Positions 5,658 to 63,265 of a DNA stretch of 64,000 nt are shown here, piece after piece; position 1 is the stretch's first letter, and every line of letters begins with the position of its first letter. The translations under genes and the position numbers were made by a program. The stretch spans positions 62,001 through 126,000 of the IMG/VR virus record IMGVR_UViG_3300045971_000344. One strand, written 5' to 3'. Under the pieces are notes generated by a model, which was given only the letters and a program-made list of their open reading frames with translations, searched no databases and had not been told where the DNA came from.

Positions 5658-7808
5658 ATGATTGAGATTGAAATTGAGCGGAGGTATCGCGTGGCAAAAA
5701 AAGAAAAAGAAGAGAAGAGTTATACTGAAAAACGAAGAGAAGCAGAAAAACCAGTTAAGATAAAAACAAAGAAAATAAAGGCTTATGATGAAGACAGCTT
5801 TAAATTTCATACACTAGACGTAGACAAAGTTAGAGCTCGTCCCTCCATGTATATGGGTTCGACACCAATCTTCCAATGTGTTAAAGAAGTTGTGGACAAT
5901 TCTATAGATGAGTACAATGAGACAGAGCAGAGTGCAAAACACTGGAATATTTATATTAGTTATACTTGTGATAAAAAATCTGGTAAGCACACCTTTACTG
6001 TAGCAGACAAAGGCAGAGGAATTCCGATAGGAATTAATAAAGATATAAAAGTAAGTACCTTAACAGGTGCCTTTACACAACTTCAAGGTGGAGGTAAATT
6101 TGATGCAAAAGCCTATGAAGCAGGTAAAGGTACAAATGGAACGGGTGTTTGTGCTACCAATGCTTTATCTGAGCAATTAGAAGTATGGACACACAGAGAT
6201 AAGCGCTGGTGGTATCAAAAGTTTGAATTTGGTAAGCCCGTTACGGAAGTAATAAGAAAAAAACCTGAAAAACAATTTATAAAAAATAGCTGTGGGACTG
6301 TTGTTTCGTTTACCGTAGATAATTCTATAGAACAAATCTCTGTGGATACTTTTGATTTATCTGGTTTTAAAACCTGGTTGAACGTTACCTCCATGATTGA
6401 TAGCCCTATCCGTATTCTTTTTGAATATGGATCAAGTAAAAAGGGATTGAAAACAATAGAGTACTTTAAACCCGATGGCGCAGTTGAATATTTAAAGATG
6501 AAACTTGAAGAGTATAAGCTTGAAACTTTTGGTAAAAAGCCGTTTGTGTTTACTCATAAATTTATGTCATGTATTTTTCAATGGGCCTCTACAGAGGAAA
6601 CACACTTTGATGCCTACACTAATGGTATTTACAACATAGACGGAGGTACGCATTTACAGGGTTTTTATTCTTCTCTTGTAAAGGCGTTTAATATAGTCGT
6701 AAATAATAAGAAAAAAGAATTAAAAGAATCTGACTTACGGGCAGGTCTAATTGGATTAGTAAACGTAAGAGTACCCGAGGCACAGTATAAAGATCAGGTT
6801 AAGAATGAGTTAAAATCACCTGTAAAGAAAAAAGTAGAAGAAACATTAATTGAACCCTTAACAGCGTGGTTTAATAGTCATAAATCCTTGGTTAAGGAAA
6901 TTCAAGAGCGAGCCACTGCTTTGAGGGATGCAAAAGAAAAAGCAAAAGAGCTTATGAAGGCCGCCTCTAAAGTTAAGACAAAAGGTCAGAGTTTGCCTTC
7001 TAAGCTGGTTATGTGTGATAGTAAAACACCTGTTGGAGAACGAGAGTTGTTTATTCTTGAAGGGGACTCTGCAGGTGGGCCAGCTAAACGAGCTAGAGAT
7101 CGTAGATACCAAATGGTTTTGCCTTTGAAAGGAAAGCCCATAAATGTCGCCCGCTGTTCAGTCGCAAAGGCATTAGGATCTGTTCCAGTAAAAGAAATAC
7201 TTACCACAATAGGTTTTGACGCCAAGAGTTATGCAAAAATAGGAAAAAGCTTAGTTCCTTTCAATGTAGGGCGTATCGTGTTAACTGCAGATGCCGATGA
7301 AGACGGTCGCCATATTGAGAACCTTATACTTACAGTATTGTATAAATTTGTACCAGATGTCTTTAAGAACAACATGGTATACCTAGTTGATTCACCTTTA
7401 TACATAGTTAGATCAAAAGGTAAAAAGAACTATGCTTATACTTATAAAGAAGCGGTTAAAAAATACGGTGATAAGGCTCAATTAAAACGTATGAAAGGCT
7501 GGGCAGAGGCTAATGATGACGAGCTAGAGTATATCGCTTTTAAAAAAGATACAAGAAAGCTATGGCTTGTCCGTCCAGTTCCTACCGCAGACGGAAAAGC
7601 TTTTCTTAAAATAGTAGGCGAGGATACTGCAGAAAGAAAAAGAATTCTTAAAATAGAATCTTATGCTGACCCTAAAAAGTTAAAAGATTCTTCTCCTAAA
7701 CCTAAGAAAGATAAAAAAGTAAAAGAGATAAAAGAAGAAACTAAGGTTAGTAAGAAACGGGGAACTAAAAATGATTATAGCAAAAAAGAAAGATTCAAAG
7801 AAAACTAA
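5658..7808 (+). CDS. type IIA DNA topoisomerase subunit B (GyrB/ParE-like); likely start GTG 5691
   Basis: RARPSMYMGS, EVVDNSIDE, DKGRGIP, GGKFD, NALS, FILEGDSAGG, LPLKGK, DADEDGRHI motifs. Confidence 0.97.
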   Translation: MIEIEIERRYRVAKKEKEEKSYTEKRREAEKPVKIKTKKIKAYDEDSFKFHTLDVDKVRARPSMYMGSTPIFQCVKEVVDNSIDEYNETEQSAKHWNIYISYTCDKKSGKHTFTVADKGRGIPIGINKDIKVSTLTGAFTQLQGGGKFDAKAYEAGKGTNGTGVCATNALSEQLEVWTHRDKRWWYQKFEFGKPVTEVIRKKPEKQFIKNSCGTVVSFTVDNSIEQISVDTFDLSGFKTWLNVTSMIDSPIRILFEYGSSKKGLKTIEYFKPDGAVEYLKMKLEEYKLETFGKKPFVFTHKFMSCIFQWASTEETHFDAYTNGIYNIDGGTHLQGFYSSLVKAFNIVVNNKKKELKESDLRAGLIGLVNVRVPEAQYKDQVKNELKSPVKKKVEETLIEPLTAWFNSHKSLVKEIQERATALRDAKEKAKELMKAASKVKTKGQSLPSKLVMCDSKTPVGERELFILEGDSAGGPAKRARDRRYQMVLPLKGKPINVARCSVAKALGSVPVKEILTTIGFDAKSYAKIGKSLVPFNVGRIVLTADADEDGRHIENLILTVLYKFVPDVFKNNMVYLVDSPLYIVRSKGKKNYAYTYKEAVKKYGDKAQLKRMKGWAEANDDELEYIAFKKDTRKLWLVRPVPTADGKAFLKIVGEDTAERKRILKIESYADPKKLKDSSPKPKKDKKVKEIKEETKVSKKRGTKNDYSKKERFKEN

Positions 7809-9222
7809 AAAACGTTCAACTCTTGATCTTACTAGTAACATAAAAGAAGATATAAAAGAAAAAGACTTAGTAACCTTGGCTACAGAGAACACCGAACGCT
7901 ATGGTAAAGAAACAATTGAAGAGCGTGCGTTGGCCGCCCAAGACGGCTTTAAACCCGTTCATAGACGGATTTTGTATTCCATGTATACTATGGGTATGAC
8001 ACCTAAATCAAACTTCAAAAAAGCTGCAAGAGTTGCGGGCGATGTAATGGGCAGATTTCACCCACATGCGGATACCGGCATTGTTGGTGCAATGGTAACT
8101 ATGGCAAATTCTCCTGAACCTATTATAGACGGAGAAGGTAACTGGGGTGACCATACAGATGCCGCTGGAGCAATGCGTTATATCGAATGCCGAATAACAA
8201 AGTATGCAGAACAGTATTTGCTGGACCCAGATTATTTACATCCGTCTGTTACGGATATGGTTAAAAATTATGATGGTGAAGAGATGGAACCAGTATTACT
8301 TCCGGCTAAACTACCTAATATACTAATAAACGGTAGTGAAGGTATTGCGATGGGTGTATCCTCTTACATTCCTAGTTTTACCAAAGACAGTGTTGTAAAG
8401 CTCGTTAAAATAGCGTTAATCGGAAAAGAAGCTACATCTAAGCTCTGTAATAAATACCTTGAGTTTAATTTTAAATATGGAGGATTTTACGTAGGTACCG
8501 CTGAGGAATTACTTTCATATTATGAGACGGGTAAGGCTTCACTTAAATTTAGATCTACAACTGAGTATGAGCCAAATAAGCATTTTGTAATAACAGCACT
8601 ACCCCCTAGAATTAGAGTGGAAACTATGCTAGACTCTTATAGGGACTTACCAGAAGTGTCTAAGGCTGAAGAAACTACTGATAAGAACGGTATTAGTTTC
8701 ACCATAAAATTGAAGAAAAATGATAATCCCAAATTGCAAGATAAACTTTTATCCATCGTAACATCTACCTTACCTTTTCAGACCTACCTAACTGAAAGAT
8801 CATTAAATGAGAATAAAGAAGTTCAAGTAAAATTCAAGAAAACAACAGTTCCAGAAATTATAAATGACTGGGTTAAATGGAGAATAGCTTTAGAGCTAAA
8901 GGTAATAAAATACCTTTTGATAAAGACCGAGCGAGAATTAGAACGCTTAACCTTATTACAGCTCGCGGCAAAAAATATGGACGTAATGAAGTCCATGCTT
9001 GACCAAAAAGATCCAATAAAATTCCTTATATCTAAATTAAAATTCAATGGTGCGAAGCTCACAGAAGATCAAGCCAATTATTTGCTCGATATCCGGTTTC
9101 GCCAATTGACGAAGCTAAATATCCAGAAGTTATTGGACGATATAAAGAAAGTAAAACTTACTATTACGGAGCTGAATAAAGACCTAAAGGATCCTAATAC
9201 TAGAATACTTAAGAGTTTGTGA
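7771..9222 (+). CDS. type IIA DNA topoisomerase subunit A (GyrA/ParC-like, no C-terminal beta-pinwheel)
   Basis: DGFKPVHRRILYSM, KKAARVAGDVMGRFHPH, GEGNWG, AMRYIECR catalytic Tyr; only 483 aa. Confidence 0.97.
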   Translation: MIIAKKKDSKKTKKRSTLDLTSNIKEDIKEKDLVTLATENTERYGKETIEERALAAQDGFKPVHRRILYSMYTMGMTPKSNFKKAARVAGDVMGRFHPHADTGIVGAMVTMANSPEPIIDGEGNWGDHTDAAGAMRYIECRITKYAEQYLLDPDYLHPSVTDMVKNYDGEEMEPVLLPAKLPNILINGSEGIAMGVSSYIPSFTKDSVVKLVKIALIGKEATSKLCNKYLEFNFKYGGFYVGTAEELLSYYETGKASLKFRSTTEYEPNKHFVITALPPRIRVETMLDSYRDLPEVSKAEETTDKNGISFTIKLKKNDNPKLQDKLLSIVTSTLPFQTYLTERSLNENKEVQVKFKKTTVPEIINDWVKWRIALELKVIKYLLIKTERELERLTLLQLAAKNMDVMKSMLDQKDPIKFLISKLKFNGAKLTEDQANYLLDIRFRQLTKLNIQKLLDDIKKVKLTITELNKDLKDPNTRILKSL

Positions 9223-9266: not shown

Positions 9267-10682
9267 ATGCCTACCGAAACTGAAGAAGTAATAAAGCCCA
9301 ACACCGCAGTCCCAGCAAAACCCAAGCCCCTTGGATCATTTACTAAAAAAGAAATTAGGCGACTGGACAACCTTTCTGACGGACGAATGAAATCATCACA
9401 GGGTAAGTATGAGCTTGAATCTGATTACCTAGATGACTACGCAGATCGGATCCGTAAAGAAGATAGGATGCAACACTTCGAGCAAGAGTTTTACGGAGAG
9501 TTGAATAAACAGCTCGATGAATACGCAAGACAAGTCATGCACTTAAAAACAGACGTACCGGGTATTTGTGTTGTTCAAAGAGGGCCCGTTATTCCTATTA
9601 GTCCTAACCTTTCTAAATTGGTGTCTGTCCGAGAAGGAGGTAAAAAAGAAGACCAATCAAAAGCAAAATCGTACTCAGGGTTGAAGATAACACAGTACGC
9701 AGGCATAAAGGTTGCCCACGTTGCTGGTTATTATATCTTTGAGGACCAAATATTACTGGGTGTGAAAATAACAGAGCTTGCTAAGCAAGATGCGGTTGTT
9801 AGCACTTATAGATCTACCTGTAAAATGTATTTGGACAAAATACATGAACTTCAAAACAAGTTACTTCCGTTAGAACTTTTGAGAAAACGCCTGAAAGAGA
9901 TTTATGAAGAAGTAGATGAGTTGTTAAACGCAAAAGAAGATCCTAATAGAGATCAAAGAGTAGATGCAAATGAAGCACGAACACAAAGAAAAGACTTCTT
10001 AATTGAAGAAGGATCTAAATTAACGGCAAAGATAAAAGAAGAAGAAGATGCTAATGTAGGACCCCTTGTAGAGCTCAATAATGTCCATGTAGAATATGAT
10101 AACTATAAGACGATGGAAAAACTAAAATTAAGTACCCAGCTAGAGAAGTCCATTAGTGGTCATAAGAGTTTGTCTGAGGCAATCTTAGAGAAGGCTATCG
10201 CAGGCGTTAGTCAACTAAATGAAAAGCTCGAAGGTGATGATAGCTTGGTCTTCGTAACCTCATTTGGATTTGACCCAACGGCTACCCTTGGAAAAGTACA
10301 AGCAAAAAGTATTGTTGTTAATCCCATTCTTCATGGTAATTTAGCTTATTTCTGGCTCATGAAGATCCGGACGGTAAATATCATAAAACGTTTCTTAGGT
10401 TCAGACGTCCATATAACAGGATATTCTTTCCCTAAGAAAGAGCGGTCTAAGATAATGAAGCGCGTAGATAATGAGGTTAAAGTAACGGGTGGGTTTACCG
10501 ATGAAATACTTAAACTTAGAAAATTCGGAACCTTAAGAGATAACGCCTTTAAGAAAATGCAAGTATTTTTGATAAAACAGCATAAAGAAATGGATGCGTA
10601 CTTTACAGAGTTGTTTGATAAAATCTGGGCAGAGTCAGAAGAGGTCTTAAAAGAAATGAAGAATAAAGGTGGCTCAAAATGA
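9267..10682 (+). CDS. coiled-coil hypothetical protein, paralog of 11050..12681
   Basis: GAGGAG RBS; shared AG..IFE.QI.L and YFWLMK motifs. Confidence 0.85.
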   Translation: MPTETEEVIKPNTAVPAKPKPLGSFTKKEIRRLDNLSDGRMKSSQGKYELESDYLDDYADRIRKEDRMQHFEQEFYGELNKQLDEYARQVMHLKTDVPGICVVQRGPVIPISPNLSKLVSVREGGKKEDQSKAKSYSGLKITQYAGIKVAHVAGYYIFEDQILLGVKITELAKQDAVVSTYRSTCKMYLDKIHELQNKLLPLELLRKRLKEIYEEVDELLNAKEDPNRDQRVDANEARTQRKDFLIEEGSKLTAKIKEEEDANVGPLVELNNVHVEYDNYKTMEKLKLSTQLEKSISGHKSLSEAILEKAIAGVSQLNEKLEGDDSLVFVTSFGFDPTATLGKVQAKSIVVNPILHGNLAYFWLMKIRTVNIIKRFLGSDVHITGYSFPKKERSKIMKRVDNEVKVTGGFTDEILKLRKFGTLRDNAFKKMQVFLIKQHKEMDAYFTELFDKIWAESEEVLKEMKNKGGSK

Positions 10683-10966
10683 CTAAGTTAATAGCTGGTG
10701 AAGAGGTTGTCTTTATAGGAATTATGGATCCAGTCTTAAAAGACTCCAGAGCAGTTGTAGTTGAGAAATTAAATAGGTTTGACTACAAGGTAGCAACTAA
10801 AGATGGATTTATGCTAACTGTTGCTGAAGTATTTCTAAAGAGGGCGACCTTACTAGATAATACCTTAATCCCAATTCCAAAAGAAGAACCTAAAGTAGAA
10901 GTTACACTTAGTGAAGGTACTCCTTATGTCCTTGTTGAAGGGGATGAATGTGAAGGGCGTAATTAA
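10679..10966 (+). CDS. hypothetical protein
   Basis: ATGA overlap. Confidence 0.65.
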   Translation: MTKLIAGEEVVFIGIMDPVLKDSRAVVVEKLNRFDYKVATKDGFMLTVAEVFLKRATLLDNTLIPIPKEEPKVEVTLSEGTPYVLVEGDECEGRN

Positions 10967-10987
10967 TTAAATTTAATATTAATGGCC

Positions 10988-11017
10988 TTGACAATACATA
11001 TAAGAATATGTTATAAT
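10988..11017 (+). promoter_or_regulatory. sigma70-type promoter
   Basis: TTGACA-18 nt-TATAAT with extended TGn -10, in an AT-rich intergenic gap. Confidence 0.8.
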
Positions 11018-11049
11018 CAAATTAAGGAATATCCCGAGATACCTAGATT

Positions 11050-12681
11050 GTGAGCGAGAGGGGAAATACGATGATACTGAGCAAAAATCTTGCTGGAATA
11101 ATTTCCAGCATTCCAGGGCTGTGCCAGAGGTTATCCAGCTTATCAGAGAAATGGAATACAGAAAGAGCAGAAAAGATAAAAGAAGAGATAGATAGCATAA
11201 TTCCGTTGTTAAGAAAAAAGGACTTTGGTCCCATAAAGAAAGGTCTGCAACATTGCAACTCTACTCTAGCTGGATGCATAGCAGGTAAGGTAGAGCAATT
11301 ACTAACTAAGTCTAAGTGTAAGTCATACATAAGAAAACTAGGGTTAACTATAACGCCCATCCTTGAGGCTATTCATGCTCTTGAAATAGATACGATACCA
11401 GAAAAAGAAGAATTACCTACGATTAGCTTTAAGCCCGGCGTTGACCTTTTAGACCAATCCATTCAAGAACGCTTATCCCTTCATACGTTAGACGATAACG
11501 GAAATCCTAGGCAAAGTGCTAATAAAGATCTTTCTACAATGGAACAGATTTGGGAAGAAGCAGAGTATAAAAATATATTACGCCAAGAGTCTTTAAATGC
11601 TTGGGATAAAAAGTTCTATGGACCCTTGGATATGGCTTATGAAAAATATAAATCCCAGATTGATAAAATACCTCGTTTCTTAAATAAACCTGCAGAGTTG
11701 TTTAGGGTGCCTATCGTTCCCTATTCCGCAAAAGAAGTAATTTTTAGAGATAAAGAACTTGCTAAGACAGATGTAGAATTGGTCTTTATAGCGGGCTTTC
11801 CTATATTTGAAAATCAAATTGTTTTGGCAATAAATACAAACAGATTTCAAGATGAGATGCTAGGGATACAGGCATACGAGTTTGAACGATCTAAGCACAG
11901 TTCTACTTTAGCTAATGCAAGAGATAAATATTTACCTATAAGAAAAATGGAACTCCAAATAAAAGAATATCAGGAAGAGCTTTCGTTCTTAACTGAACCT
12001 TTAGTAGAAGGTACCGGTATAAACAAAGAGGATGCACAAGCAGTAAGAACACTGAGATCTTCTTGGATTAACGCTGAGATTGAAAAATTGATTGTAAATA
12101 TAAACGCTAGAAAGGTCAAATATGCTGACCTGTTTAAGGAATTGGAAGTAGGTACAGCTAAGCTACGCGAGATATCAAAAGGTAAACCAAAAGATAGCGG
12201 AGACAGTGTAAAGCGCACGCTGGAAACAGCTGAAGAATACTTGAAGATAATAAATAGTAAGCTATCTTTTGAAGAACAGCTTGGACTTGTTACAAATACA
12301 CCATATCCTTATGGGTATGGAACAACGTATTTTTGGTTAATGAAGGATTCTAATCTAGCAAAGTGGAACGTAAATTTATCTTTCAACAGAGAAAAACTAA
12401 ATATATCTAGTTGGTCATTTGTAAATCCACCTGAAACAAAATCTGCTTTTGAGCACCTTCAAGCGTTTCAAACAGAGTTGCAAAACTTCGTACTGTCCTC
12501 AATTCGGAACGGTTTAACCATTGACCAATGTTGTTTGAAGTTAAAGGTGTATCTAAAGAAACGCCGTAAGACCTATGGCAATGAACATCGTGAGCTCGTA
12601 AAGAAAATTTATTCGGACTTTTCAGATAGTGGGATTAAGCGCGTTGACCTTAAGGCTCCAAAGGTGAGGTTTCTTGTATGA
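11050..12681 (+). CDS. coiled-coil hypothetical protein, paralog of 9267..10682 (likely start ATG 11071)
   Basis: 543-aa ORF downstream of consensus promoter. Confidence 0.85.
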   Translation: MSERGNTMILSKNLAGIISSIPGLCQRLSSLSEKWNTERAEKIKEEIDSIIPLLRKKDFGPIKKGLQHCNSTLAGCIAGKVEQLLTKSKCKSYIRKLGLTITPILEAIHALEIDTIPEKEELPTISFKPGVDLLDQSIQERLSLHTLDDNGNPRQSANKDLSTMEQIWEEAEYKNILRQESLNAWDKKFYGPLDMAYEKYKSQIDKIPRFLNKPAELFRVPIVPYSAKEVIFRDKELAKTDVELVFIAGFPIFENQIVLAINTNRFQDEMLGIQAYEFERSKHSSTLANARDKYLPIRKMELQIKEYQEELSFLTEPLVEGTGINKEDAQAVRTLRSSWINAEIEKLIVNINARKVKYADLFKELEVGTAKLREISKGKPKDSGDSVKRTLETAEEYLKIINSKLSFEEQLGLVTNTPYPYGYGTTYFWLMKDSNLAKWNVNLSFNREKLNISSWSFVNPPETKSAFEHLQAFQTELQNFVLSSIRNGLTIDQCCLKLKVYLKKRRKTYGNEHRELVKKIYSDFSDSGIKRVDLKAPKVRFLV

Positions 12682-13097
12682 TTTGCTACGTTTGTCACTG
12701 CACCCCAGAAGTTCCTCATGAACACCATCCAGAGTTGCAGGCGTACGGTGGGACAGATAAGGGTACAGTAATACTATGTAGTAACTGTCATAATTCTCTC
12801 CATAAAGAAATCTCAAGGTTGCATGCGCTTTATAAAAAAGGGAAAGGAGGTGAAGGCGTAAGGTGGAACACTGCACGACACAGTCAAGAAGTTGAAAACG
12901 CTAAAAATCTTGTTTTATGTGGCTTAAAAAGTATCGTAATGTTTGAAGGACAGAAAAAGACAAAAGTGAATATAAGTGTTGACCAACAAACCCACCAAAC
13001 TATCACGGCGTTAAAGGGAAAATTGGGTGCATCCAACATACAGGACACCATACTCCATTGTATAAAATACACCGCCAAAGTGCACGGTTTGGGATAA
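12678..13097 (+). CDS. HNH-type Zn-binding nuclease domain with C-terminal ribbon-helix-helix-like segment
   Basis: CxxC...HEHH...LCSNCHNSLH; C-terminal KVNISVDQQTHQTITALK. Confidence 0.65.
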   Translation: MICYVCHCTPEVPHEHHPELQAYGGTDKGTVILCSNCHNSLHKEISRLHALYKKGKGGEGVRWNTARHSQEVENAKNLVLCGLKSIVMFEGQKKTKVNISVDQQTHQTITALKGKLGASNIQDTILHCIKYTAKVHGLG

Positions 13098-13146
13098 ACC
13101 CATCCTTTTATAAGGATTAGACATTTACCCTCTTGGGTATTAAATT

Positions 13147-13917
13147 TTGGGAGGCACGACCTTAATGGCAAAACCCGGCATACCGAAACTTGTTAAATTC
13201 TGCGGAACCTGTCGTCATTATTGTTGGATAGTTGGACCAAATAGAAAAACAACCTGTAACAACTTAGGGTCAATAGATACAACCCCTGGGTGTCTTGATT
13301 ATGCAATTAATCCCTTTGTCTTAAAGGATTATATCTCGGTCCTAAAGCCCTTATCTGAAGTATTGAGAGTTATGCCTCTAACTGTCTTACCTATGTTTTA
13401 TGAAATCATAGCGCAAGAAAAGGTTTTACGCAGACGTGGTTTCTATTTCATGGAAAAAGTAGCAATTAAGTATTATGGTTCAGCTGCAGACAAGTATATA
13501 AGCAACTACGTAGTTGCTCATGTCTTTAGCTCGACTGATGAAGGTGTACTCGTAATAAGTAAAAGCGGTATAAGAATGTTTGTTCTAAAGGAAAACGTAA
13601 TTAAGTTTGCACTTTTTCTGGAGATGCGTAGGGACCTAAAAGAGGCAGGAAAGAATGTCGATCCTACAATAAAGATGCGTTCTGTAAAACAGAAGCTCGC
13701 ATTGACCGAAACCTTGGATGATATTTTAGACCGAGGTCTTTTAGACGATGAGGATCTTGACAAATCCTTGAAGTCAAAATTCAGTACGAGTAAAATAAAC
13801 AGGCGGATTACTGATCCAGAAGAAGGGTTGGGTATAAAAGAAAAGAAGAAAACTATGAAGTTTTCAGAGATGGAAATTTCTACTAGGTCTCCTATTAAGA
13901 AAGGAGGGTCCAAGTAG
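13147..13917 (+). CDS. hypothetical protein (N-terminal CxxC..C..C)
   Basis: 256-aa ORF, GGAGG RBS before ATG 13165. Confidence 0.8.
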   Translation: MGGTTLMAKPGIPKLVKFCGTCRHYCWIVGPNRKTTCNNLGSIDTTPGCLDYAINPFVLKDYISVLKPLSEVLRVMPLTVLPMFYEIIAQEKVLRRRGFYFMEKVAIKYYGSAADKYISNYVVAHVFSSTDEGVLVISKSGIRMFVLKENVIKFALFLEMRRDLKEAGKNVDPTIKMRSVKQKLALTETLDDILDRGLLDDEDLDKSLKSKFSTSKINRRITDPEEGLGIKEKKKTMKFSEMEISTRSPIKKGGSK

Positions 13918-15045
13918 ATGAATAGATCTCTAGCTAAATACATACGCGAATATTTTGGTTTTATGTACGGTACAAAAGAGTTTATGGACATTTATTTGTA
14001 TAGCCTACAGTATATAACTAAGTCAATGTCGGCATCAAGATTCCATAAACTAGTTAAATGTATCTCCTCTAGGTCTATTAAAGATTTCAGACTTGGACTA
14101 ACCAATATCGGTTATTATATTCTAAATCTAAAAATGTATGTTCTGCATAGCATAGCGAAGACCGTAGATAAAACTTTATCAGATACAATCCGTAAGAAAG
14201 ATAAGCAATATGCAGTGTTCTTTTTTAAAGATAAAATGCTTAAGACTACAGTAAAAATGTTAAAAGCACAGTTCAAAGTTTTACCTTCATTGAACGAAAT
14301 AAAGGTTTTACTTGTCAAGGTGTCTGCAATGGCAGATGTAAAGCTCAAGCCCTTAATAAACAACATTGTATGGCGTCGCCTTAAATTTTTATCTTATAGT
14401 AATTCAATTGATTTAGAATCTATTAGAGCAGAGTTGAAGGCAAAACTTGTACAGTCATTCTATTGGCTAATGCCGTATAAAAAAGAAACGGTCTATCATT
14501 GGGTAATGACCATGATAAAGCCCCTAAAGAATCACGCTATAAACTTGGTTAATTTTTACACGACCAAAAAGAGAGTCCGGATGTATGAGGACCACGAAGG
14601 AAAGTATAAGGTTAAGGAAATAAGTATTGATGCAATTCTTTCAGATGAAAATAGAGAAGGTATGCAGTTAAGCGATGGAAACGAGTATAAAGTAAATGTA
14701 GAGAACAAGGTAGCATTAAAACAAGTATATGATAGGTTCGCAATAACTAGTAAGCGTATTTTAGCATTCAAACTATTGAGTGGAACCTTTGATGGTGAAT
14801 TTACACAGTGGTTAAGGGCGAATAAGTATATTAGTGGTCTATCCAATATGGATAATACGGATTATCAAGATAAAGAAGACCCAATGCTATTCTTGCGGCT
14901 CGTAGCGGCCTTTGTAGGAATACGATGGGACCATTTTTATCGCATGATAACCCGAATCCGTAGTTCCTTAGTTGAGCCTACATCTACAAAGGGGGTGTCG
15001 GATAATTATGTGCTCAATTCCGCTTACGCCTCATCAAGCCCCTGA
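13918..15045 (+). CDS. putative divergent RNA polymerase sigma factor
   Basis: region-2-like LINNIVWRRL...DLESIRAELKAKL...LKNHAINLVNFYTTKKR followed by region-3-like ISIDAIL. Confidence 0.5.
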   Translation: MNRSLAKYIREYFGFMYGTKEFMDIYLYSLQYITKSMSASRFHKLVKCISSRSIKDFRLGLTNIGYYILNLKMYVLHSIAKTVDKTLSDTIRKKDKQYAVFFFKDKMLKTTVKMLKAQFKVLPSLNEIKVLLVKVSAMADVKLKPLINNIVWRRLKFLSYSNSIDLESIRAELKAKLVQSFYWLMPYKKETVYHWVMTMIKPLKNHAINLVNFYTTKKRVRMYEDHEGKYKVKEISIDAILSDENREGMQLSDGNEYKVNVENKVALKQVYDRFAITSKRILAFKLLSGTFDGEFTQWLRANKYISGLSNMDNTDYQDKEDPMLFLRLVAAFVGIRWDHFYRMITRIRSSLVEPTSTKGVSDNYVLNSAYASSSP

Positions 15046-16729: not shown

Positions 16730-18709
16730 ATGAAGTTTTCAGATGTAGTAGCTGATCTAAAGAAAAGCGGATTATCCGAGGCTAAGGCTCTTGAAGTCGT
16801 AAAGACCAGACTTGCCGCAAAGGGGCACGAGCTCACCCCTGTAAAGATGCAACTGTTCCATAATACTTGGGAGACTACAGAAGCCCCGGTGGTTAATAAG
16901 CCCCAAAAGACTAAGAAAGAAAGGGCGGTTAAACCGTCAGGGCCTGTAGTAATTAATCCCTTGGTCGCCCCAAGCATAGATAACGCGGACGAACTTTTTA
17001 AAGCTCTTGCTACTTTTGGACTCGCAGTAATAGCCTGGACAAATGGGGTGAAGTTAGACCCAATTAGACAGCTCTTGTCAACTAATAAGCCCACCTTAGA
17101 TAGCTTCTTCAAAAACTCTAAGATGAATACAACCGCGTATAATGTAATATGCGGGTTAATTTTAGAGAAAAAAGCGTACAGCGCAGACAAAAGAAAGGCC
17201 GATGTTACCGCCTTTGGAAATGATTTAAAAGGAATACCTGATATTTTGTCTTCAAGGCAATATAAGTTATTACCAGCCAAAGTAACCTATCTAAAGAACA
17301 TAGCAGGATATTTGAAATCTAGTGCACCCACTGATAATGCTTATAAAAATATCGTAAATAAGGCCTCCTCTATTAGGGTCCCTCAAGCATCCGCCTTATT
17401 TACGTCCCACGTTGCCGAAAAGGTTAATCTTCCAGCTAACATAGGCGAAATGGTAACCAACTATAAAAAATTAAATAAAAAATTCGGTGGGAATGAAGGT
17501 TACACTATTCCAACAGACACTTTGAAAAAATATAGAGATACTCCTACAAAGGAATACACTAATTATTGTGCAATTGAAAAGGATTTGAATGCTCAACTTA
17601 AGTTGTTGACCCGGGTTGTAGTAGATAGTAGTGGGCAACAGACGATGGATGTGGAAGACTTTAAGAAACAGATAAAAGCAAAAGGTTTTGACTTTAATAA
17701 AGTTCCCGTTGGATTCATTGGTCGTATTGATGCTCAAGGAAAGTTCTATACAAAAGAAGGGTACTTGCTAAAGGACCAGCCTTCTGGTGTAATAAAAACA
17801 ATGAGTACAAAAGCGTATAATTCTAAAGATGGAACTGGTGCATACTGTGTGTACTTAAAAGCTGGTGGAAAGGCCCAACGTTGTTACACCATGATGCACC
17901 ATAGCGGTAAGCGAGAAGATAAGAAACAAGATATCGTAGACGATTTTATTAAGAATATGGTCGCCTATAGAAAACACTGGATGAAGGACTTAAAGGCTGG
18001 GTCCAAGATCTTAACAGACAAAGCAATAGCTGCATTGGTTATTGAAATAATGTTCCAGCTCTGTCCGAGACCGGGCTACGAAGAACATGGAAACAATAAG
18101 AAATTTGAAAATACAAAAGGGTTTATTTATCTTACCCGAGGAGAAGTTAAGCTCGAAGGTAACGATATTCACTTTAAATACACAGATAAGAACGGACCTC
18201 AGCATTTAATTTACACTAAGGGAGAAATGTACGGATCAGTTAGTGATGATACCCTTGTAGTTAACTGCTTAAAGAAATTAATGGAGAATAAAGATAAAGA
18301 TGAGTATTTATGGAAATACAGTGGAGATAACGTTGACTACGACCAGATTAAGAATTATGCAAGATCTGTAATACCCGGGTTTAACTTACATAAGTTTAGG
18401 AATTCTAAAGCGTCAATGATGGCAAAAGACATGCTAGGTGCGTGTAAACTCCCTAAAGGTTCTACCCCTAAAGAAGTATCAGATTACTACATGGATGTAA
18501 TGACAAAGGTAGGAGAAGAACTAGGTCATAGATCGGGTGAAGAAGCGAGTCCCTCAATGGCAATTTCTTCATATGTCTTAAAAAGCATCTCCAATGAGTT
18601 CTTTGATAGGTATGATGTTAGTCCTACTCAAAAAATAGCTGCTCAGATAAATACTGCAGAAGCTTCATCTTCGGGGTTGACGGTCCACATAGGCCGAAGA
18701 AAGTCATGA
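16730..18709 (+). CDS. type IB DNA topoisomerase-like protein with long N-terminal extension
   Basis: pentad R (CPRPG), K (FKYTDKNG), R (HKFRN), H (LGHR), Y (SSYV) in poxvirus TopIB order and spacing. Confidence 0.8.
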   Translation: MKFSDVVADLKKSGLSEAKALEVVKTRLAAKGHELTPVKMQLFHNTWETTEAPVVNKPQKTKKERAVKPSGPVVINPLVAPSIDNADELFKALATFGLAVIAWTNGVKLDPIRQLLSTNKPTLDSFFKNSKMNTTAYNVICGLILEKKAYSADKRKADVTAFGNDLKGIPDILSSRQYKLLPAKVTYLKNIAGYLKSSAPTDNAYKNIVNKASSIRVPQASALFTSHVAEKVNLPANIGEMVTNYKKLNKKFGGNEGYTIPTDTLKKYRDTPTKEYTNYCAIEKDLNAQLKLLTRVVVDSSGQQTMDVEDFKKQIKAKGFDFNKVPVGFIGRIDAQGKFYTKEGYLLKDQPSGVIKTMSTKAYNSKDGTGAYCVYLKAGGKAQRCYTMMHHSGKREDKKQDIVDDFIKNMVAYRKHWMKDLKAGSKILTDKAIAALVIEIMFQLCPRPGYEEHGNNKKFENTKGFIYLTRGEVKLEGNDIHFKYTDKNGPQHLIYTKGEMYGSVSDDTLVVNCLKKLMENKDKDEYLWKYSGDNVDYDQIKNYARSVIPGFNLHKFRNSKASMMAKDMLGACKLPKGSTPKEVSDYYMDVMTKVGEELGHRSGEEASPSMAISSYVLKSISNEFFDRYDVSPTQKIAAQINTAEASSSGLTVHIGRRKS

Positions 18710-19991: not shown

Positions 19992-21386
19992 GTGAGAGTG
20001 GGATGGGGTATGCCAAAGATATTTGACTGTTTTACGTTCTTCAATGAGTTTGAACTTCTGGAAATTCGTTTGAACGAGTTAAAAGATGTTGTAGACACTT
20101 TTGTTATCTGCGAATCCAGTTATACCTTTACGGGCAAACCTAAGCAGTTGTTATTGGCAAATAACTTGGGCGCCCTTAAAGGGTTTAACGTAAAATTACT
20201 GGCGTACAGCCCACACACTCCAGCTGAAAATGCTTGGGATAATGAACGGGGGCAAAGGGCATATCTAAAGGTAGGTCTGGACGAACTGGCTATTGAAGAC
20301 AATGACTTGGTTATGCTTACAGACGTGGATGAGATACCATCTGCCGAGATCATAAGAAAGATTAATCCAATTCAGATAATTGATTTAGAAATGGAGACAT
20401 CTTATTACTATGTGAACAATAGGACTAGCGAAGTTTGTTACGCGCCTAAGCTATTTAAATCACACTGGTTAAAAAGCTTTAGCATTGACCAAATACGGAA
20501 CATGAATCCTGGGTATTTCGTAGCAAATTCAGGAAATCATTTTTCTTACTTAGGTGGGATTGAGCGTATTAAAGATAAAATTGAGTCGTTCTCCCACCAA
20601 GAGTTTAATAATGAGGCATTTAATACGACTGAGAAATTAGAGCAGAAATTGAGCTCTAACGTAGATCTGTTTAATCGTAAATTGGATTATCGGACAATAC
20701 CTTTGTCTGCAGTAAGGAACTGTCCACAGTATTTATTGGATAATCAAGAACGCTTTTCACACATGATAAAGGTTACCCTACCTCAGTTGGATCTACCTCA
20801 GGTTACGCTAATTGCTATTGATTGTGTTGACCCAGTTAGAGCAGAACGAGTCTTGGAGATTTGTAAGGGTCATTGTAACTTCGGGTCAATAAAGCTCTTA
20901 ACCTCTGGTTATACCTCTAGTGAGTACGCAGTAAAGATTTCTAATATAGGATCTCTTAAGGAGTATACTGAGTTTATACTAACGGAACTGTATAAGCACA
21001 TAGACACCGAATACGTTATGCTTGTCCAGCACGATGGGTACATCTTGGATTCGTCTAAGTGGGACCCGGAATTCTTAAAATATGACTATATTGGGGCACC
21101 TTGGGATTCAAGGTTATTAGACCAGAAGGTTTCAAATAACTACTTGGTCGGTAATGGGGGCTTTAGCTTAAGGTCCAAAAAGTTATGCAAGCTCACGGCT
21201 AAAATGAGTCATAGATTGTTGAGACATGAATTTGAAGATGTTTCGATATGTCAGCTCAATAGGTCATATCTAGAAACCTTCGGTATTAAGTACGCGCCCG
21301 TAGAGCTCGCAAGACAGTTTAGCTGGGAAACTGAGAGTAGACCACCTGGTGGTACTTTTGGGTTTCACGGTAAGGACAAACTTTAA
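19992..21386 (+). CDS. glycosyltransferase family 17-like domain fused to DUF5672-like domain (start probably ATG 20010)
   Basis: FDCFTFFNEFELLEIRLNEL..VDTFVICES; QHDGYI...WDPEFLKYDYIGAPW...VGNGGFSLRSKK. Confidence 0.85.
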   Translation: MRVGWGMPKIFDCFTFFNEFELLEIRLNELKDVVDTFVICESSYTFTGKPKQLLLANNLGALKGFNVKLLAYSPHTPAENAWDNERGQRAYLKVGLDELAIEDNDLVMLTDVDEIPSAEIIRKINPIQIIDLEMETSYYYVNNRTSEVCYAPKLFKSHWLKSFSIDQIRNMNPGYFVANSGNHFSYLGGIERIKDKIESFSHQEFNNEAFNTTEKLEQKLSSNVDLFNRKLDYRTIPLSAVRNCPQYLLDNQERFSHMIKVTLPQLDLPQVTLIAIDCVDPVRAERVLEICKGHCNFGSIKLLTSGYTSSEYAVKISNIGSLKEYTEFILTELYKHIDTEYVMLVQHDGYILDSSKWDPEFLKYDYIGAPWDSRLLDQKVSNNYLVGNGGFSLRSKKLCKLTAKMSHRLLRHEFEDVSICQLNRSYLETFGIKYAPVELARQFSWETESRPPGGTFGFHGKDKL

Positions 21387-28641: not shown

Positions 28642-29113
28642 AAACCTTATTTATGATTATGCTCGTACAACCCGGGGCTTGCAGGTAGTGGCAACCAAAG
28701 AGTATTCCTTCGAGTTTAAGTCGCTAGTTGCAGAATACAGAGGTCTTTATGGAGGTCAAAGAGCCCACCCTAAGAATACCTTTGAGTTCATTATCAGAGA
28801 GACCAAAGGTGCTCCACTAGTTACATTCTGCGCGGGTGTAGACAAAGAGACTCGAATGTTCTACATTGGGTACTCTGCGTGTAAAACAACAGAGGATACC
28901 TTCAATAAAGAAGAGGGTAGGGCAGGAGCAGAACTTAGAATGATGATTGATGACGGGGTAGAATTACAGGCCCTTTTTAGTACTTTCCCTGTGAGTCAAA
29001 AGACGGCATTACAGAATTTTTTGGTACGCTGTGAAAAATATTACCAAGGGTGTACCGTAGGGTACCCATATCTCAATTGGATAGAAAAAGGAGAGTCTGA
29101 AAATGAGCATTGA
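28634..29113 (+). CDS. hypothetical protein with GYSAC...D.FNKEEGR..A motif
   Basis: AAGGAG RBS. Confidence 0.75.
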   Translation: MIENLIYDYARTTRGLQVVATKEYSFEFKSLVAEYRGLYGGQRAHPKNTFEFIIRETKGAPLVTFCAGVDKETRMFYIGYSACKTTEDTFNKEEGRAGAELRMMIDDGVELQALFSTFPVSQKTALQNFLVRCEKYYQGCTVGYPYLNWIEKGESENEH

Positions 29114-29933
29114 AATCGTTAAGGCAAATGTAGTACCTATTGTTACGCCTTCAACCTTTAAGAACATGAGAGTTTCGGGAATCGCCGCAAAGACCTGTAC
29201 CAGTGCAGATAGTTTTGCCGAGATATTAGATGCAGATACTGACTATTTGGATGTCCTTAAAAGAGTAATAAATTATGGGCATTTATCTGTAACTGAATTT
29301 GACACTTGGGTTTTTGGTGTTGAAAACGTGAGTCGGACAATGACACACCAACTGGTTAGGAAGCGCATCGGGGTGGCTTACGGGCAAGAGTCTATGCGAT
29401 ATGCTTCACAGGCCGGAGTGTATAAGATTATTGTTCCTGATACTCTGAAAGATAAAAGGTATGATATTGACTTACCAAATCTAGGTGGGAAAATAAATCT
29501 ATCTCTTGAGGACTTAGCAACAATTTCGCATAACTGGTATGAAGCCGCTCAGGTAGAAGGCGTGCCCAACGAAGATGCACGCTTCGGACTTCTTGAGGCC
29601 TCAAAAACAAAGATACTGGTCGGTATGAATACTCATGCTCTTCTTGATTTCTTTAAAGAACGAACCTGTAATACCGCACAATGGGAGATCCGAGATGTAG
29701 CTAAAAAGATGCTTATGATCTGTAAAGAATATGACCCTGAAGTATTTGAAGGCGCAGGTCCAAAATGTAACTATACCAACGTATGCAATGAACCAAAAGT
29801 AAAATGGAAAACCTGCCAAAGGGTTCCACATAAGTCAAATTCCGCGCTTATAGGTGATGTAGCGAGCTTTATTGAGCAGCTTAACCTTACCGAAGCACAA
29901 ATAGAGACCGCGCTTAAGATCCTAAAAGGGTGA
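29103..29933 (+). CDS. thyX: FAD-dependent thymidylate synthase
   Basis: GHLSVTEF, SRTMTHQLVRKR, QESMRY, EDARF, ERTCNTAQWEIR. Confidence 0.95.
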   Translation: MSIEIVKANVVPIVTPSTFKNMRVSGIAAKTCTSADSFAEILDADTDYLDVLKRVINYGHLSVTEFDTWVFGVENVSRTMTHQLVRKRIGVAYGQESMRYASQAGVYKIIVPDTLKDKRYDIDLPNLGGKINLSLEDLATISHNWYEAAQVEGVPNEDARFGLLEASKTKILVGMNTHALLDFFKERTCNTAQWEIRDVAKKMLMICKEYDPEVFEGAGPKCNYTNVCNEPKVKWKTCQRVPHKSNSALIGDVASFIEQLNLTEAQIETALKILKG

Positions 29934-62335: not shown

Positions 62336-62338
62336 AGA

Positions 62339-63265
62339 CTAATCCTTTAGCGACTCATATTTTTCTTTTAGAAATTCTAACACTGTAGAAGCGTCTCGTA
62401 ACTTATGTCGGCGCATATTAGCGATAAAGTCATCCACAATCATTTTTTCTGCCTTAGACCCAGAACGAGAATTGTGTATATTGTTCTCTATAGAGATTTG
62501 AATATCTCTTCTATCAGATCCGTAGTATAATCTTGACCTCAAATCATCTGCGTCTTCTGAAAGAACATCTCCACAGTTTTTCTTAAAAAGCTCATTTATT
62601 AGGTCCACGTATCCTCTAGATGAAGTAAATCCTTTTGTTGCCTTGTTTTTGTTCTGCACCATATAAGCGTTGTAATCCTTATAGAAATAAATAGGGATAC
62701 CATAGGCGGTTCCATATTCACCTATCTTTCTATACATCTTAGCAAAGTCATAATACTTATCGAATTCTTTGCTTGTCAATTCTCTCTTTTTGTCAATACT
62801 TATAACTGCGTACTCACAAAGGTTTATGTGGACCTCAGTTATATACTTATTTAGGGGCTTTATAGTTGGTTCTGTAGAGTAAATGCGATCCTCATTCTCT
62901 TGATACCTAAGTGGTGCCTCATCATCTGAAGATCCATTTCGGAATTCTCTACCCCAGTAATCTACGGATTCACCTGAGTATTTCTCTGCGAGCTTATGTC
63001 CGTTAATTACCAAGCAACAAGCCCAATCCGGACTTGCCTGTCGTGCGTATCCTCCAAACTTAACCCTAGACATAGACAAAAAGTAAGGTTTAAACTTCTT
63101 GGACTTATTTGTTCTATCTGAAGATGTACCTAGGTTATTGGTCAAGTGTATGTTATTGTCTTCCATTATATTTACAAGTTTATCCACAGTAGTATTATGG
63201 TACACGATAGGAGATATACCTGCCAGTTCTGTATTAGTGTTAACATGTACTTTATTTATCTTCAT
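62339..63265 (-). CDS. putative ADP-ribosyltransferase-fold protein
   Basis: VYHNT...FLSMSR...QENEDRIY in ART strand order. Confidence 0.45.
   Translation of the reverse strand: MKINKVHVNTNTELAGISPIVYHNTTVDKLVNIMEDNNIHLTNNLGTSSDRTNKSKKFKPYFLSMSRVKFGGYARQASPDWACCLVINGHKLAEKYSGESVDYWGREFRNGSSDDEAPLRYQENEDRIYSTEPTIKPLNKYITEVHINLCEYAVISIDKKRELTSKEFDKYYDFAKMYRKIGEYGTAYGIPIYFYKDYNAYMVQNKNKATKGFTSSRGYVDLINELFKKNCGDVLSEDADDLRSRLYYGSDRRDIQISIENNIHNSRSGSKAEKMIVDDFIANMRRHKLRDASTVLEFLKEKYESLKD

What the first reader, a model, noticed from the sequence alone, without database searches (positions are those of the whole stretch)
9267..12681. Tandem paralogous split-domain coiled-coil proteins next to topoisomerase II
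The 471-aa and 543-aa unknowns share motifs in the same order: HVAGYYIFEDQILLGVK / FIAGFPIFENQIVLAIN, a long heptad-rich insert, LAYFWLMK / TTYFWLMK, then VHITGYSF / LNISSWSF. This suggests a globular domain interrupted by an antiparallel coiled coil, topologically like SMC/Rad50 arms but with no Walker motifs. Their position directly after topo IIA and near topo IB suggests a heterodimeric DNA-organising or replication-compartment factor (inference). The second copy has its own consensus sigma70 promoter (10988..11017), so the two may be expressed at different times.
Basis: partly seen in the sequence, partly recalled or inferred. Interest (0 to 1): 0.65.

Follow-up and report, generated by a model that had tools for sequence, protein, structure and literature searches.

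The report
Paired coiled-coil proteins beside phage topoisomerase
Two old gene copies in a giant pond phage encode a protein with no recognisable relative of known function: a compact head split by a long helical hairpin, which always sits in front of a small HNH nuclease-like gene and usually just after the phage's topoisomerase II, so it probably acts on DNA, though its function is unproven.

Summary
AlphaFold places a helical hairpin of about 125 residues between two head segments. There is no Walker A motif. The exact TTGACA-18-TATAAT promoter before B is real, and a near-consensus one recurs before B in every independent related locus.

The family is rare: 21 representatives among 1.84 billion proteins. 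It splits into A-type and B-type clades (support 1.00), so the duplication predates these phages. Remote single-copy relatives occur in cultured jumbo phages (NCTB, Erwinia Y3, Dickeya AD1, PaBG, Motura, phiRSL1, Vibrio GR11A), all uncharacterised.

The tightest linkage is downstream, not to topoisomerase II. The module is coiled-coil protein, HNH-like zinc-finger protein (start overlaps B's stop), a Cys-rich phrog_17701 protein and the helical phrog_19229 protein. In PaBG this module lies 23 kb from topo II.

Pfam, PHROGs, NCBIfam, PADLOC, PDB sequences, Foldseek and VIA-align gave no characterised relative.

Best reading (confidence about 0.35): non-enzymatic scaffold subunits of an early-expressed DNA-processing module. 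The heterodimer and replication-compartment ideas remain untested.

The parts
5658..7808 (+). Topoisomerase II large subunit (GHKL ATPase, transducer and Toprim; GyrB-like)
   Evidence: Pfam DNA_gyraseB 1.1e-26, Toprim 3.4e-9 and HATPase_c 2.7e-7. phrog_543, 4.3e-119.
7771..9222 (+). Topoisomerase II DNA-breakage subunit (GyrA/ParC-like N-terminal part, no C-terminal pinwheel); overlaps the previous gene by 38 nt
   Evidence: Pfam DNA_topoisoIV 1.9e-83, covering positions 2-421 of 432. phrog_551, 3.7e-89.
9267..10682 (+). Paralog A (471 aa, P0001), the short A-type: head, helical hairpin (residues 169-292), head, then a basic three-helix C-terminus
   Evidence: GAGGAG lies 9 nt before the ATG.
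10679..10966 (+). 95-aa ORF whose start overlaps A's stop (ATGA); it matches no family and is absent between A and B in related loci
10988..11017 (+). Consensus sigma-70-type promoter, TTGACA-18-TATAAT with an extended -10 TG, in front of paralog B
   Evidence: It is the only exact match in the window and one of four in the 295-kb genome, all on the + strand at 36-73 kb and all ending in the same ATGTTATAAT. A near-consensus promoter sits at the same place in L004/L006, L010, L009 and L007.
11071..12681 (+). Paralog B (536 aa, P0006; the alternative GTG start at 11050 gives 543 aa), the long B-type with a conserved N-terminal extension of about 150 aa
12678..13097 (+). HNH-like zinc-finger protein (139 aa); its start overlaps B's stop (ATGA)
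   Evidence: The C-x2-C, H-x-H-H, GG and C-x2-C-H-x3-H motifs are visible in the sequence. C3, C6, H16, H17, C37, H38 and H42 are invariant in 7 homologs. The PaBG and GR11A homologs hit HNH PHROGs at 8e-5 to 1e-3. The window protein itself gives only a weak hit, 0.0068.
13147..13917 (+). phrog_17701 protein (256 aa; the label 'DNA topoisomerase' is unverified); its N-terminus is Cys-rich
   Evidence: phrog_17701, 3.8e-15; sequence. hhalign against the phage's GyrA-like family shows no similarity.
13918..15045 (+). phrog_19229 protein (375 aa, function unknown), the last gene of the conserved module
   Evidence: phrog_19229, 1e-24. tblastn finds it in 48 jumbo-phage records. It has no Pfam or PDB relative.
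16730..18709 (+). Phage topoisomerase IB (659 aa), syntenic in the related loci
   Evidence: Pfam Topoisom_I 2e-10 and phrog_23460 3.2e-55. Homologs occur in PaBG, Lu11, NCTB, phiRSL1 and Motura.

Best explanation
A and B are ancient paralogs of an uncharacterised protein family found only in jumbo phages. I read them as non-enzymatic scaffold subunits of a conserved, early-expressed DNA-processing module. Each protein has a compact alpha/beta head built from two sequence segments, a rigid antiparallel helical hairpin of about 125 residues projecting from it, and a basic three-helix C-terminus. The module continues with an HNH-like nuclease, a Cys-rich phrog_17701 protein and the helical phrog_19229 protein. 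It sits among replication, recombination and topology genes. Shown here: the paralogy, the architecture (as a prediction), the absence of NTPase motifs, the synteny, the overlap of B's stop with the HNH-like start, and the conserved host-type promoter. Inferred: the proteins dimerise, A with B in this clade and a homodimer where there is one copy. Also inferred: they hold or position the HNH-like nuclease and its partners on DNA, as Rad50/SbcC does for Mre11/SbcD but without ATP, on the same DNA that the phage topoisomerases act on.
For: Paralogy is supported. The family has separate A and B clades with support 1.00, and one copy of each occurs in the window and in L004. The architecture comes from the AlphaFold2 models. 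There is no Walker A motif, and no Asp, Glu, His, Cys or Ser is invariant in the family; the invariant residues are P107, Q161, Y181, N318, W363 and M365. Gene order GyrB-like, GyrA-like, A, promoter, B, a 140-aa gene, a 240-340-aa gene, a 375-aa gene, then topo IB is kept in loci whose A proteins are only 25-35% identical. Remote single-copy relatives keep the same neighbours. These relatives were detected by Foldseek BFVD at probability 1.0 and E 1e-7 to 5e-4, by hhalign at 81-86% probability and by a profile search at E 5e-5 and 2.9e-4. In them the HNH-like, phrog_17701 and phrog_19229 genes follow directly. The stop of the coiled-coil gene overlaps the HNH-like start in the window, in AD1 and in PaBG. 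Flanking genes are topo II, RecA/SSB or DnaB. A near-consensus sigma-70 promoter precedes B in every independent locus that holds the region upstream of B. The C-terminal helices are basic, with pI 9.6 and 9.9.
Against: There is no direct evidence of DNA binding, dimerisation or contact with the HNH-like protein. The only complex prediction, A with B, gave no answer. No fold or sequence relative of known function was found, so the scaffold role rests on architecture and gene neighbourhood alone. The window's HNH-like protein scores only weakly against HNH models, so nuclease activity is unproven. Paralog A is coupled to a non-conserved 95-aa ORF, not to the nuclease gene. The genome's metallophosphatase gene (not tested for Mre11 kinship) lies 47 kb away, so there is no Rad50/Mre11-style pairing with it. 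Early expression is inferred from promoter sequence only, because no RNA run holds this phage.
Confidence: 0.35

Rival explanations
1. A and B are accessory or regulatory subunits of the phage topoisomerase II. They would dock on the GyrA-like subunit, which lacks a C-terminal DNA-wrapping domain, and supply DNA capture or partner recruitment.
For: The family gene lies immediately downstream of the GyrA-like gene in the window's clade, NCTB, Y3, AD1 and GR11A. A appears to be co-transcribed with the topo II genes, since no promoter or terminator separates them. The GyrA-like subunit ends with the breakage-reunion core.
Against: In PaBG the family gene follows RecA, and the GyrA-like gene is 23 kb away. 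B has its own conserved promoter and is coupled to the downstream HNH-like gene. hhalign finds no similarity to the GyrA-like family. No interaction test with topo II was run.
Confidence: 0.15
2. The module is an early host-takeover device. A strong host-type promoter drives a nuclease complex that attacks or reorganises the host nucleoid, and the coiled-coil proteins target or restrain it.
For: A consensus sigma-70 promoter precedes B in all related loci, and the other exact consensus promoters of the genome lie in the same + strand block at 36-73 kb. An HNH-like protein is translationally coupled to B. Genes nearby hint at DNA or nucleotide modification, namely ThyX and glycosyltransferases.
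Against: The flanking genes are replication, recombination and topology genes, not typical host-shutoff genes. There are no expression data. Timing is inferred from sequence only.
Confidence: 0.15
3. A and B form an SMC/Rad50-like heterodimer that bridges or compacts phage DNA or builds a replication compartment.
For: The topology is head, antiparallel coiled coil, head. The two paralogs are kept side by side in every phage of the clade. The genome has no AAA_23 or SMC_N match.
Confidence: 0.07
4. They are structural or injected proteins (virion, internal head or ejection proteins) that merely lie in this gene block.
For: Long helical hairpins are common in phage structural and ejection proteins. 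One family member gave a weak hit to phiKZ internal head proteins, E 0.0098.
Against: The genes lie among DNA-metabolism genes and behind a host-type promoter. The PaBG virion proteome paper does not mention gp115 among its identified proteins, though only 14 abundant proteins were detected (PMC7412058).
Confidence: 0.08

Closest known systems
Uncharacterised proteins of cultured jumbo phages: NCTB BN7874_087 (460 aa), Erwinia phage Y3 gp330 (phrog_34809) and Dickeya AD1_326, PaBG gp115, plus Foldseek matches in Motura, phiRSL1 and pEa_SNUABM_5
   Same: The predicted fold matches (Foldseek probability 1.0, E 1e-7 to 5e-4). They share the FE[DN]Q-type and W-x-M...W-x-[FL]-P motifs. They are followed by the same HNH-like, phrog_17701 and phrog_19229 genes, and mostly preceded by topo II.
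   Different: There is one copy per genome instead of two. Sequence similarity is near the detection limit: plain tblastn finds nothing. Y3 gp330 and NCTB 087 end right after the W-x-P motif and lack the C-terminal three-helix part. None has a known function.
Rad50/SbcC-Mre11/SbcD and SMC-type proteins
   Same: A globular head is made from the N- and C-terminal segments with an antiparallel coiled coil between them. The gene is paired with a nuclease gene. The setting is DNA metabolism.
   Different: There are no Walker A/B or signature motifs. The hairpin is much shorter and has no zinc hook or hinge. The partner is an HNH-like protein, not a metallophosphatase. There is no sequence or fold match.
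Other proteins with a helical hairpin inserted in or attached to a small domain: periplasmic adaptor EmrA, CT398/HP0958 zinc-ribbon proteins, and the coiled-coil motif of large serine integrases
   Same: A long antiparallel hairpin projects from a small domain. These appear among the weak structural matches.

Membership tests
SMC / Rad50 / SbcC / RecN ABC-type ATPases | Walker A P-loop in the N-terminal head segment | tested here: not met
   The pattern [AG]x4GK[ST] is absent from A and B. There is no conserved Gly/Lys motif in the family alignment.
SMC / Rad50 / SbcC / RecN ABC-type ATPases | Sequence or profile match to SMC_N or AAA_23, with Walker B and signature motif in the C-terminal head | tested here: not met
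   Pfam scans of all 15 family members gave no such hit. PF13476 and PF02463 find nothing in the whole genome, although they match in all 14 control genomes. No acidic residue is invariant.
SMC / Rad50 / SbcC / RecN ABC-type ATPases | Conserved dimerisation element at the coiled-coil tip (zinc hook CxxC or hinge) | tested here: not met
   The tip region has no Cys and carries lineage-specific insertions of up to about 30 residues.
SMC / Rad50 / SbcC / RecN ABC-type ATPases | Head fold similar to ABC ATPase heads | tested here: inconclusive
Type IIA topoisomerase subunit (GyrA/ParC-like) | Profile similarity to the breakage-reunion domain | tested here: not met
   hhalign of the family (A2) against the phage GyrA-like alignment (A6) gives probability 0.3%. 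There is no Pfam DNA_topoisoIV hit.
Jumbo-phage uncharacterised family (Y3 gp330 / phrog_34809, NCTB 087, PaBG gp115) | Shared predicted fold and motifs | tested here: met
   Foldseek BFVD gives probability 1.0 for six such proteins. hhalign gives 81-86% for Y3 gp330 and PaBG gp115. A profile search of their genomes gives E 5e-5 and 2.9e-4. The direct PHROG scan of A and B found no family, so this is superfamily-level kinship only.
Jumbo-phage uncharacterised family (Y3 gp330 / phrog_34809, NCTB 087, PaBG gp115) | Conserved neighbourhood: followed by the HNH-like, phrog_17701 and phrog_19229 genes | tested here: met
   Seen in the window, L004/L006 and the 129-kb ENA contig, NCTB, AD1 and Y3, PaBG and GR11A.

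The most novel reading that the evidence does not exclude
The coiled-coil proteins, the HNH-like nuclease, the phrog_17701 protein and the phrog_19229 protein form a previously unknown, ATP-independent DNA-processing machine of jumbo phages. The head-hairpin-head proteins, with a fold that has no solved relative, would tether or gate the nuclease on DNA and work with phage topoisomerases II and IB during replication or recombination of very large genomes. In this clade the scaffold would have become an obligate A/B heterodimer with separately regulated subunits.
Probability: 0.15. Interest if true: 0.75.

Novelty: categorically new. Interest (0 to 1): 0.5.

Why it matters
Jumbo phages of the PaBG, Lu11, NCTB, phiRSL1 and Y3 kind carry their own topoisomerases II and IB, and about 70% of their genes have no known function. 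This work defines a four-gene module kept across very divergent members of that group. It lies in the replication and recombination region and opens with a protein whose fold matches nothing solved. If the module proves to be a DNA-processing complex, it would add a new component to the replication or recombination apparatus of large phages, and a new ATP-independent use of the head-coiled-coil-head design. It also gives testable handles in cultured phages: Y3 gp330, AD1_326, PaBG gp115 and NCTB 087. If the module is only a lineage-specific accessory, the finding is still a clean family definition with a dated duplication and a conserved early promoter. The rating 'categorically new' reflects the lack of any characterised relative, not a demonstrated new mechanism.

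Tried and rejected
- **Phage database searches with the window sequence:** megablast of the region and tblastn of A and of B against 50,697 phage records found no match.
- **Word-index protein search:** with A and with the family alignment it returned only the window's own proteins, because coiled-coil words saturate the candidate list.
- **IMG/VR scans:** these found only the L004 contig again.
- **Family libraries:** Pfam and PHROGs on A and B, Pfam on all 15 members, NCBIfam and PADLOC gave nothing above noise.
- **PDB sequence profile search:** only coiled-coil noise, E at least 0.011.
- **ESM Atlas feature searches:** scores of 0.79-0.88 are in the range of shuffled controls.
- **Complex prediction of A (25-471) with B (1-536):** score 0.00, returned as 'no answer'. 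It is neither support nor evidence against binding.
- **The 'DNA topoisomerase' label of phrog_17701:** hhalign against the phage GyrA-like family shows no similarity, so the label is unverified.
- **phrog_19229 protein:** the PDB profile search and Pfam scan gave nothing.
- **Which paralog the single-copy relatives resemble:** hhalign against the A-only and B-only profiles was inconclusive.
- **Expression data:** only two pond-metagenome DNA runs hold the region, possibly the source samples, and no RNA run does. I therefore did not use read laying.
- **Failed script:** one tree script got no answer from the script machine. I replaced it with FastTree.
- **Rejected idea, composition artefact:** the head segments align significantly on their own, so the similarity is not coiled-coil composition.
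- **Rejected idea, homing HNH endonuclease:** the HNH-like gene keeps the same position in all lineages.
Full report
**Setting**

The window is bases 62001-126000 of a 294,944-bp IMG/VR virus record judged complete, that is, a jumbo phage. The only public runs that hold the region are two pond-metagenome DNA runs, which may be the source samples. No RNA run holds it. Genes in the first 59 kb are almost all on the + strand. I used table 11 throughout. I saw nothing resembling human sequence and did not use read laying.

**Observation**

- BLASTP of A against B gives 21% identity over 439 residues, E 9e-14.
- Cut into pieces, the N-terminal head segments give E 1.2e-8, the C-terminal parts 1.3e-4 and the hairpins 1e-3. 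Cross-pairings give nothing. The similarity is therefore not a coiled-coil composition effect.
- Neither protein has a Walker A motif.
- Upstream lie a GyrB-like gene (5658-7808) and a GyrA-like gene (7771-9222). Topo IB lies at 16730-18709.

Two corrections apply. A 95-aa ORF (10679-10966) lies between the copies, with its ATG overlapping A's stop. B most likely starts at ATG 11071, which has a GAGAGGGG ribosome-binding site and matches the 536-aa gene call on record (P0006), rather than at GTG 11050.

**Promoter**

TTGACA-18-TATAAT at 10988-11017 is the only exact match in the window, where 0.12 are expected by chance.
- The whole genome has four exact matches. All are on the + strand between 36 and 73 kb, and all end in the same ATGTTATAAT.
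- The A-B intergenic gap of every related locus that holds it carries a near-consensus promoter at the same place. L004/L006 and L010 have TTGACA-17-TATAAT, L009 has TTGACA-18-TACAAT and L007 has TTGACA-17-TATACT.
- The A proteins of these loci are only 25-35% identical to the window's, so the promoter is a conserved feature.
- No terminator-like site separates A from the promoter. B is thus probably read from both upstream transcripts and its own promoter. Different timing of A and B is plausible but not shown.

**Family**

An exhaustive HMMER search of 1.84 billion representative proteins, using the A/B profile, found 21 proteins at E up to 0.001 and 14 below 1e-30.
- The alignment (A2) separates short A-type proteins (411-490 aa) from long B-type proteins (516-583 aa). 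The B-type carries a conserved N-terminal extension of about 150 residues.
- In a FastTree tree the B-type clade has support 1.00. The window and L004 each contribute one A and one B. The duplication is therefore older than these phages.
- Invariant residues are P107, Q161, Y181, N318, W363 and M365, in A numbering. No Asp, Glu, His, Cys or Ser is invariant, which argues against an enzyme.
- The hairpin tip carries lineage-specific insertions.
- Many A-type proteins, though not the window's, end in a short conserved tail of the form K-x-A-S-S-L-L after a variable linker. This looks like a docking peptide. That reading is inference.

**Structure**

The AlphaFold2 model of A, from a 15-sequence alignment, has mean pLDDT 75. 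In order along the chain it has:
- a long helix at 52-91;
- strands at 101-111 and 148-167;
- four helices at 169-292 forming an antiparallel hairpin with a mid-arm kink;
- helix 302-320;
- strands between 327 and 387;
- three helices at 395-467.

I could not inspect coordinates, however, so the packing of the two head halves is inferred. The C-terminal helices are basic (pI 9.6 in A, 9.9 in B), while the hairpin is acidic in A (pI 5.2) and near neutral in B (pI 6.8).

Searches with the full model matched only generic hairpins:
- Foldseek PDB, best E 0.055;
- ESM Atlas, TM at most 0.23 by query.

**Relatives in cultured phages**

Foldseek against predicted viral structures gave six matches at probability 1.0, E 1e-7 to 5e-4. 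All are uncharacterised:
- a 460-aa protein matching NCTB BN7874_087 in length and position;
- proteins of Erwinia phage pEa_SNUABM_5, Achromobacter phage Motura, phiRSL1 and PaBG;
- one unnamed protein.

Profile comparisons agree. Y3 gp330 scores 81-86% by hhalign, with a clear FENQ-type motif and the W...W-x-P motif. PaBG gp115 scores 81%. A profile search of the genomes gives E 5e-5 for PaBG and 2.9e-4 for Vibrio phage GR11A. These phages carry one copy each.

**Neighbourhood**

In the window's clade the gene order is kept: GyrB-like, GyrA-like, sometimes a small ORF, A, promoter, B, a 140-aa gene, a 240-340-aa gene, a 375-aa gene, a few small genes, topo IB, then a PIF1-type helicase.

The three genes after B are as follows.
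- **HNH-like zinc-finger protein (12678-13097).** The C-x2-C, H-x-H-H, GG and C-x2-C-H-x3-H pattern is invariant in seven homologs. The PaBG and GR11A homologs hit HNH PHROGs.
- **phrog_17701 (13147-13917).** It has a Cys-rich N-terminus. Its 'DNA topoisomerase' label is not backed by similarity to the phage GyrA-like family.
- **phrog_19229 (13918-15045).** No other relative was found.

The same four-gene order follows topo II in NCTB, in Y3 and AD1 and in GR11A. In PaBG the module follows RecA and SSB and precedes DnaB, while the GyrA-like gene is 23 kb away. In NCTB DnaB also lies just downstream. phiRSL1 has the phrog_19229 homolog (E 1.9e-25), and a 188-aa ORF, equal in length to the Foldseek match, lies about 3 kb upstream of it.

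The stop of the coiled-coil gene overlaps the start of the HNH-like gene in the window (ATGA), in AD1 (8 nt) and in PaBG (8 nt).

**Interpretation**

The invariant partnership is with the HNH-like, phrog_17701 and phrog_19229 genes. Topo II is a frequent but not obligatory neighbour. The setting is replication, recombination and topology genes, with a strong host-type promoter.

The protein looks non-enzymatic: a head, a rigid hairpin and a basic C-terminus. I therefore favour, at confidence about 0.35, a scaffold or DNA-tethering subunit of a DNA-processing module built around the HNH-like protein. After the duplication, A would be co-transcribed with topo II, and B would head the module's own transcription unit.

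The analogy to Rad50-Mre11 is one of design only, because all tested defining features of SMC/Rad50 fail. The genome has a metallophosphatase gene, not tested here for Mre11 kinship, but it lies 47 kb away.

The rivals are a topo II accessory subunit (0.15), an early host-takeover nuclease complex (0.15), an SMC-like DNA organiser (0.07) and a structural protein (0.08). The A/B heterodimer is a reasonable inference from retained adjacent paralogs. The single complex prediction returned no answer and counts neither way.

**Novelty and limits**

No characterised relative was found by any sequence or structure method available. Cultured-phage homologs are annotated only as hypothetical. By distance from known systems the family is new, but its function is not established.

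The full model's head could not be searched without the hairpin. A known fold could therefore still be hidden there.

Noticed in passing
genome 36020, 42661, 54296 and 72988 (the last is window 10988-11017): The four exact TTGACA-17/18-TATAAT promoters of the 295-kb genome all lie on the + strand between 36 and 73 kb, and all share the same extended -10 (ATGTTATAAT). Several one-mismatch sites lie in the same block. This looks like the phage's early, host-RNA-polymerase-dependent region.
   Followed up: partly
window 12678-15045: A conserved trio follows paralog B: an HNH-like zinc-finger protein, a Cys-rich phrog_17701 protein whose 'DNA topoisomerase' label I could not verify, and the helical phrog_19229 protein. 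The trio is kept from this metagenomic clade to NCTB, Y3/AD1, PaBG and GR11A, and at least phrog_19229 is also in phiRSL1. None has a known function.
   Followed up: partly
window 10679-10966: A 95-aa ORF is translationally coupled to paralog A through an ATGA overlap. It has no family match and no counterpart between A and B in the related loci. L010 instead has a 366-nt gap at that position that may hold a different small ORF.
   Followed up: partly
A-type homologs P0011, P0012, P0014, P0015 and P0017-P0019, and L007:3-908 (C-termini): Many A-type proteins end in a short conserved tail of the form K-x-A-S-S-L-L after a variable linker, like a docking peptide for a hub protein. The window's own A lacks it.
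   Followed up: no
window 16730-18709: The phage topoisomerase IB is 659 aa, but the Pfam catalytic-core match covers only residues 393-606. The N-terminal half of about 390 residues is unassigned. Relatives occur in PaBG, Lu11, NCTB, HRDY3, Motura, phiRSL1 and Xanthomonas phages.
   Followed up: partly
window 19992-21386 and 29103-29933: A two-domain glycosyltransferase (GT17 plus DUF5672) and a ThyX-type thymidylate synthase lie downstream. These may hint at modified nucleotides or glycosylation in this phage.
   Followed up: no
window 59501-63265: Gene orientation and GC/AT skew flip at about 59.5 kb. A 944-aa ORF and a 308-aa ORF on the - strand have no Pfam or PHROG match.
   Followed up: no
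the 129-kb ENA contig 2GtbX_33 (no DNA held; listed): In this relative the GyrB-like gene is shorter (552 aa). A 415-aa gene on the opposite strand (DUF7487 with a weak TnsA-like endonuclease N-terminal match) and a 243-aa gene lie between it and the GyrA-like gene. This may be a mobile-element insertion that splits the topo II large subunit.
   Followed up: no
L022 (phiRSL1) 353-1097: ORF002 (353-889) and ORF003 (531-1097) overlap by about 360 nt in the record. ORF003 is 188 aa, the length of the Foldseek match B2ZXM2. The true gene here may be longer than annotated.
   Followed up: no
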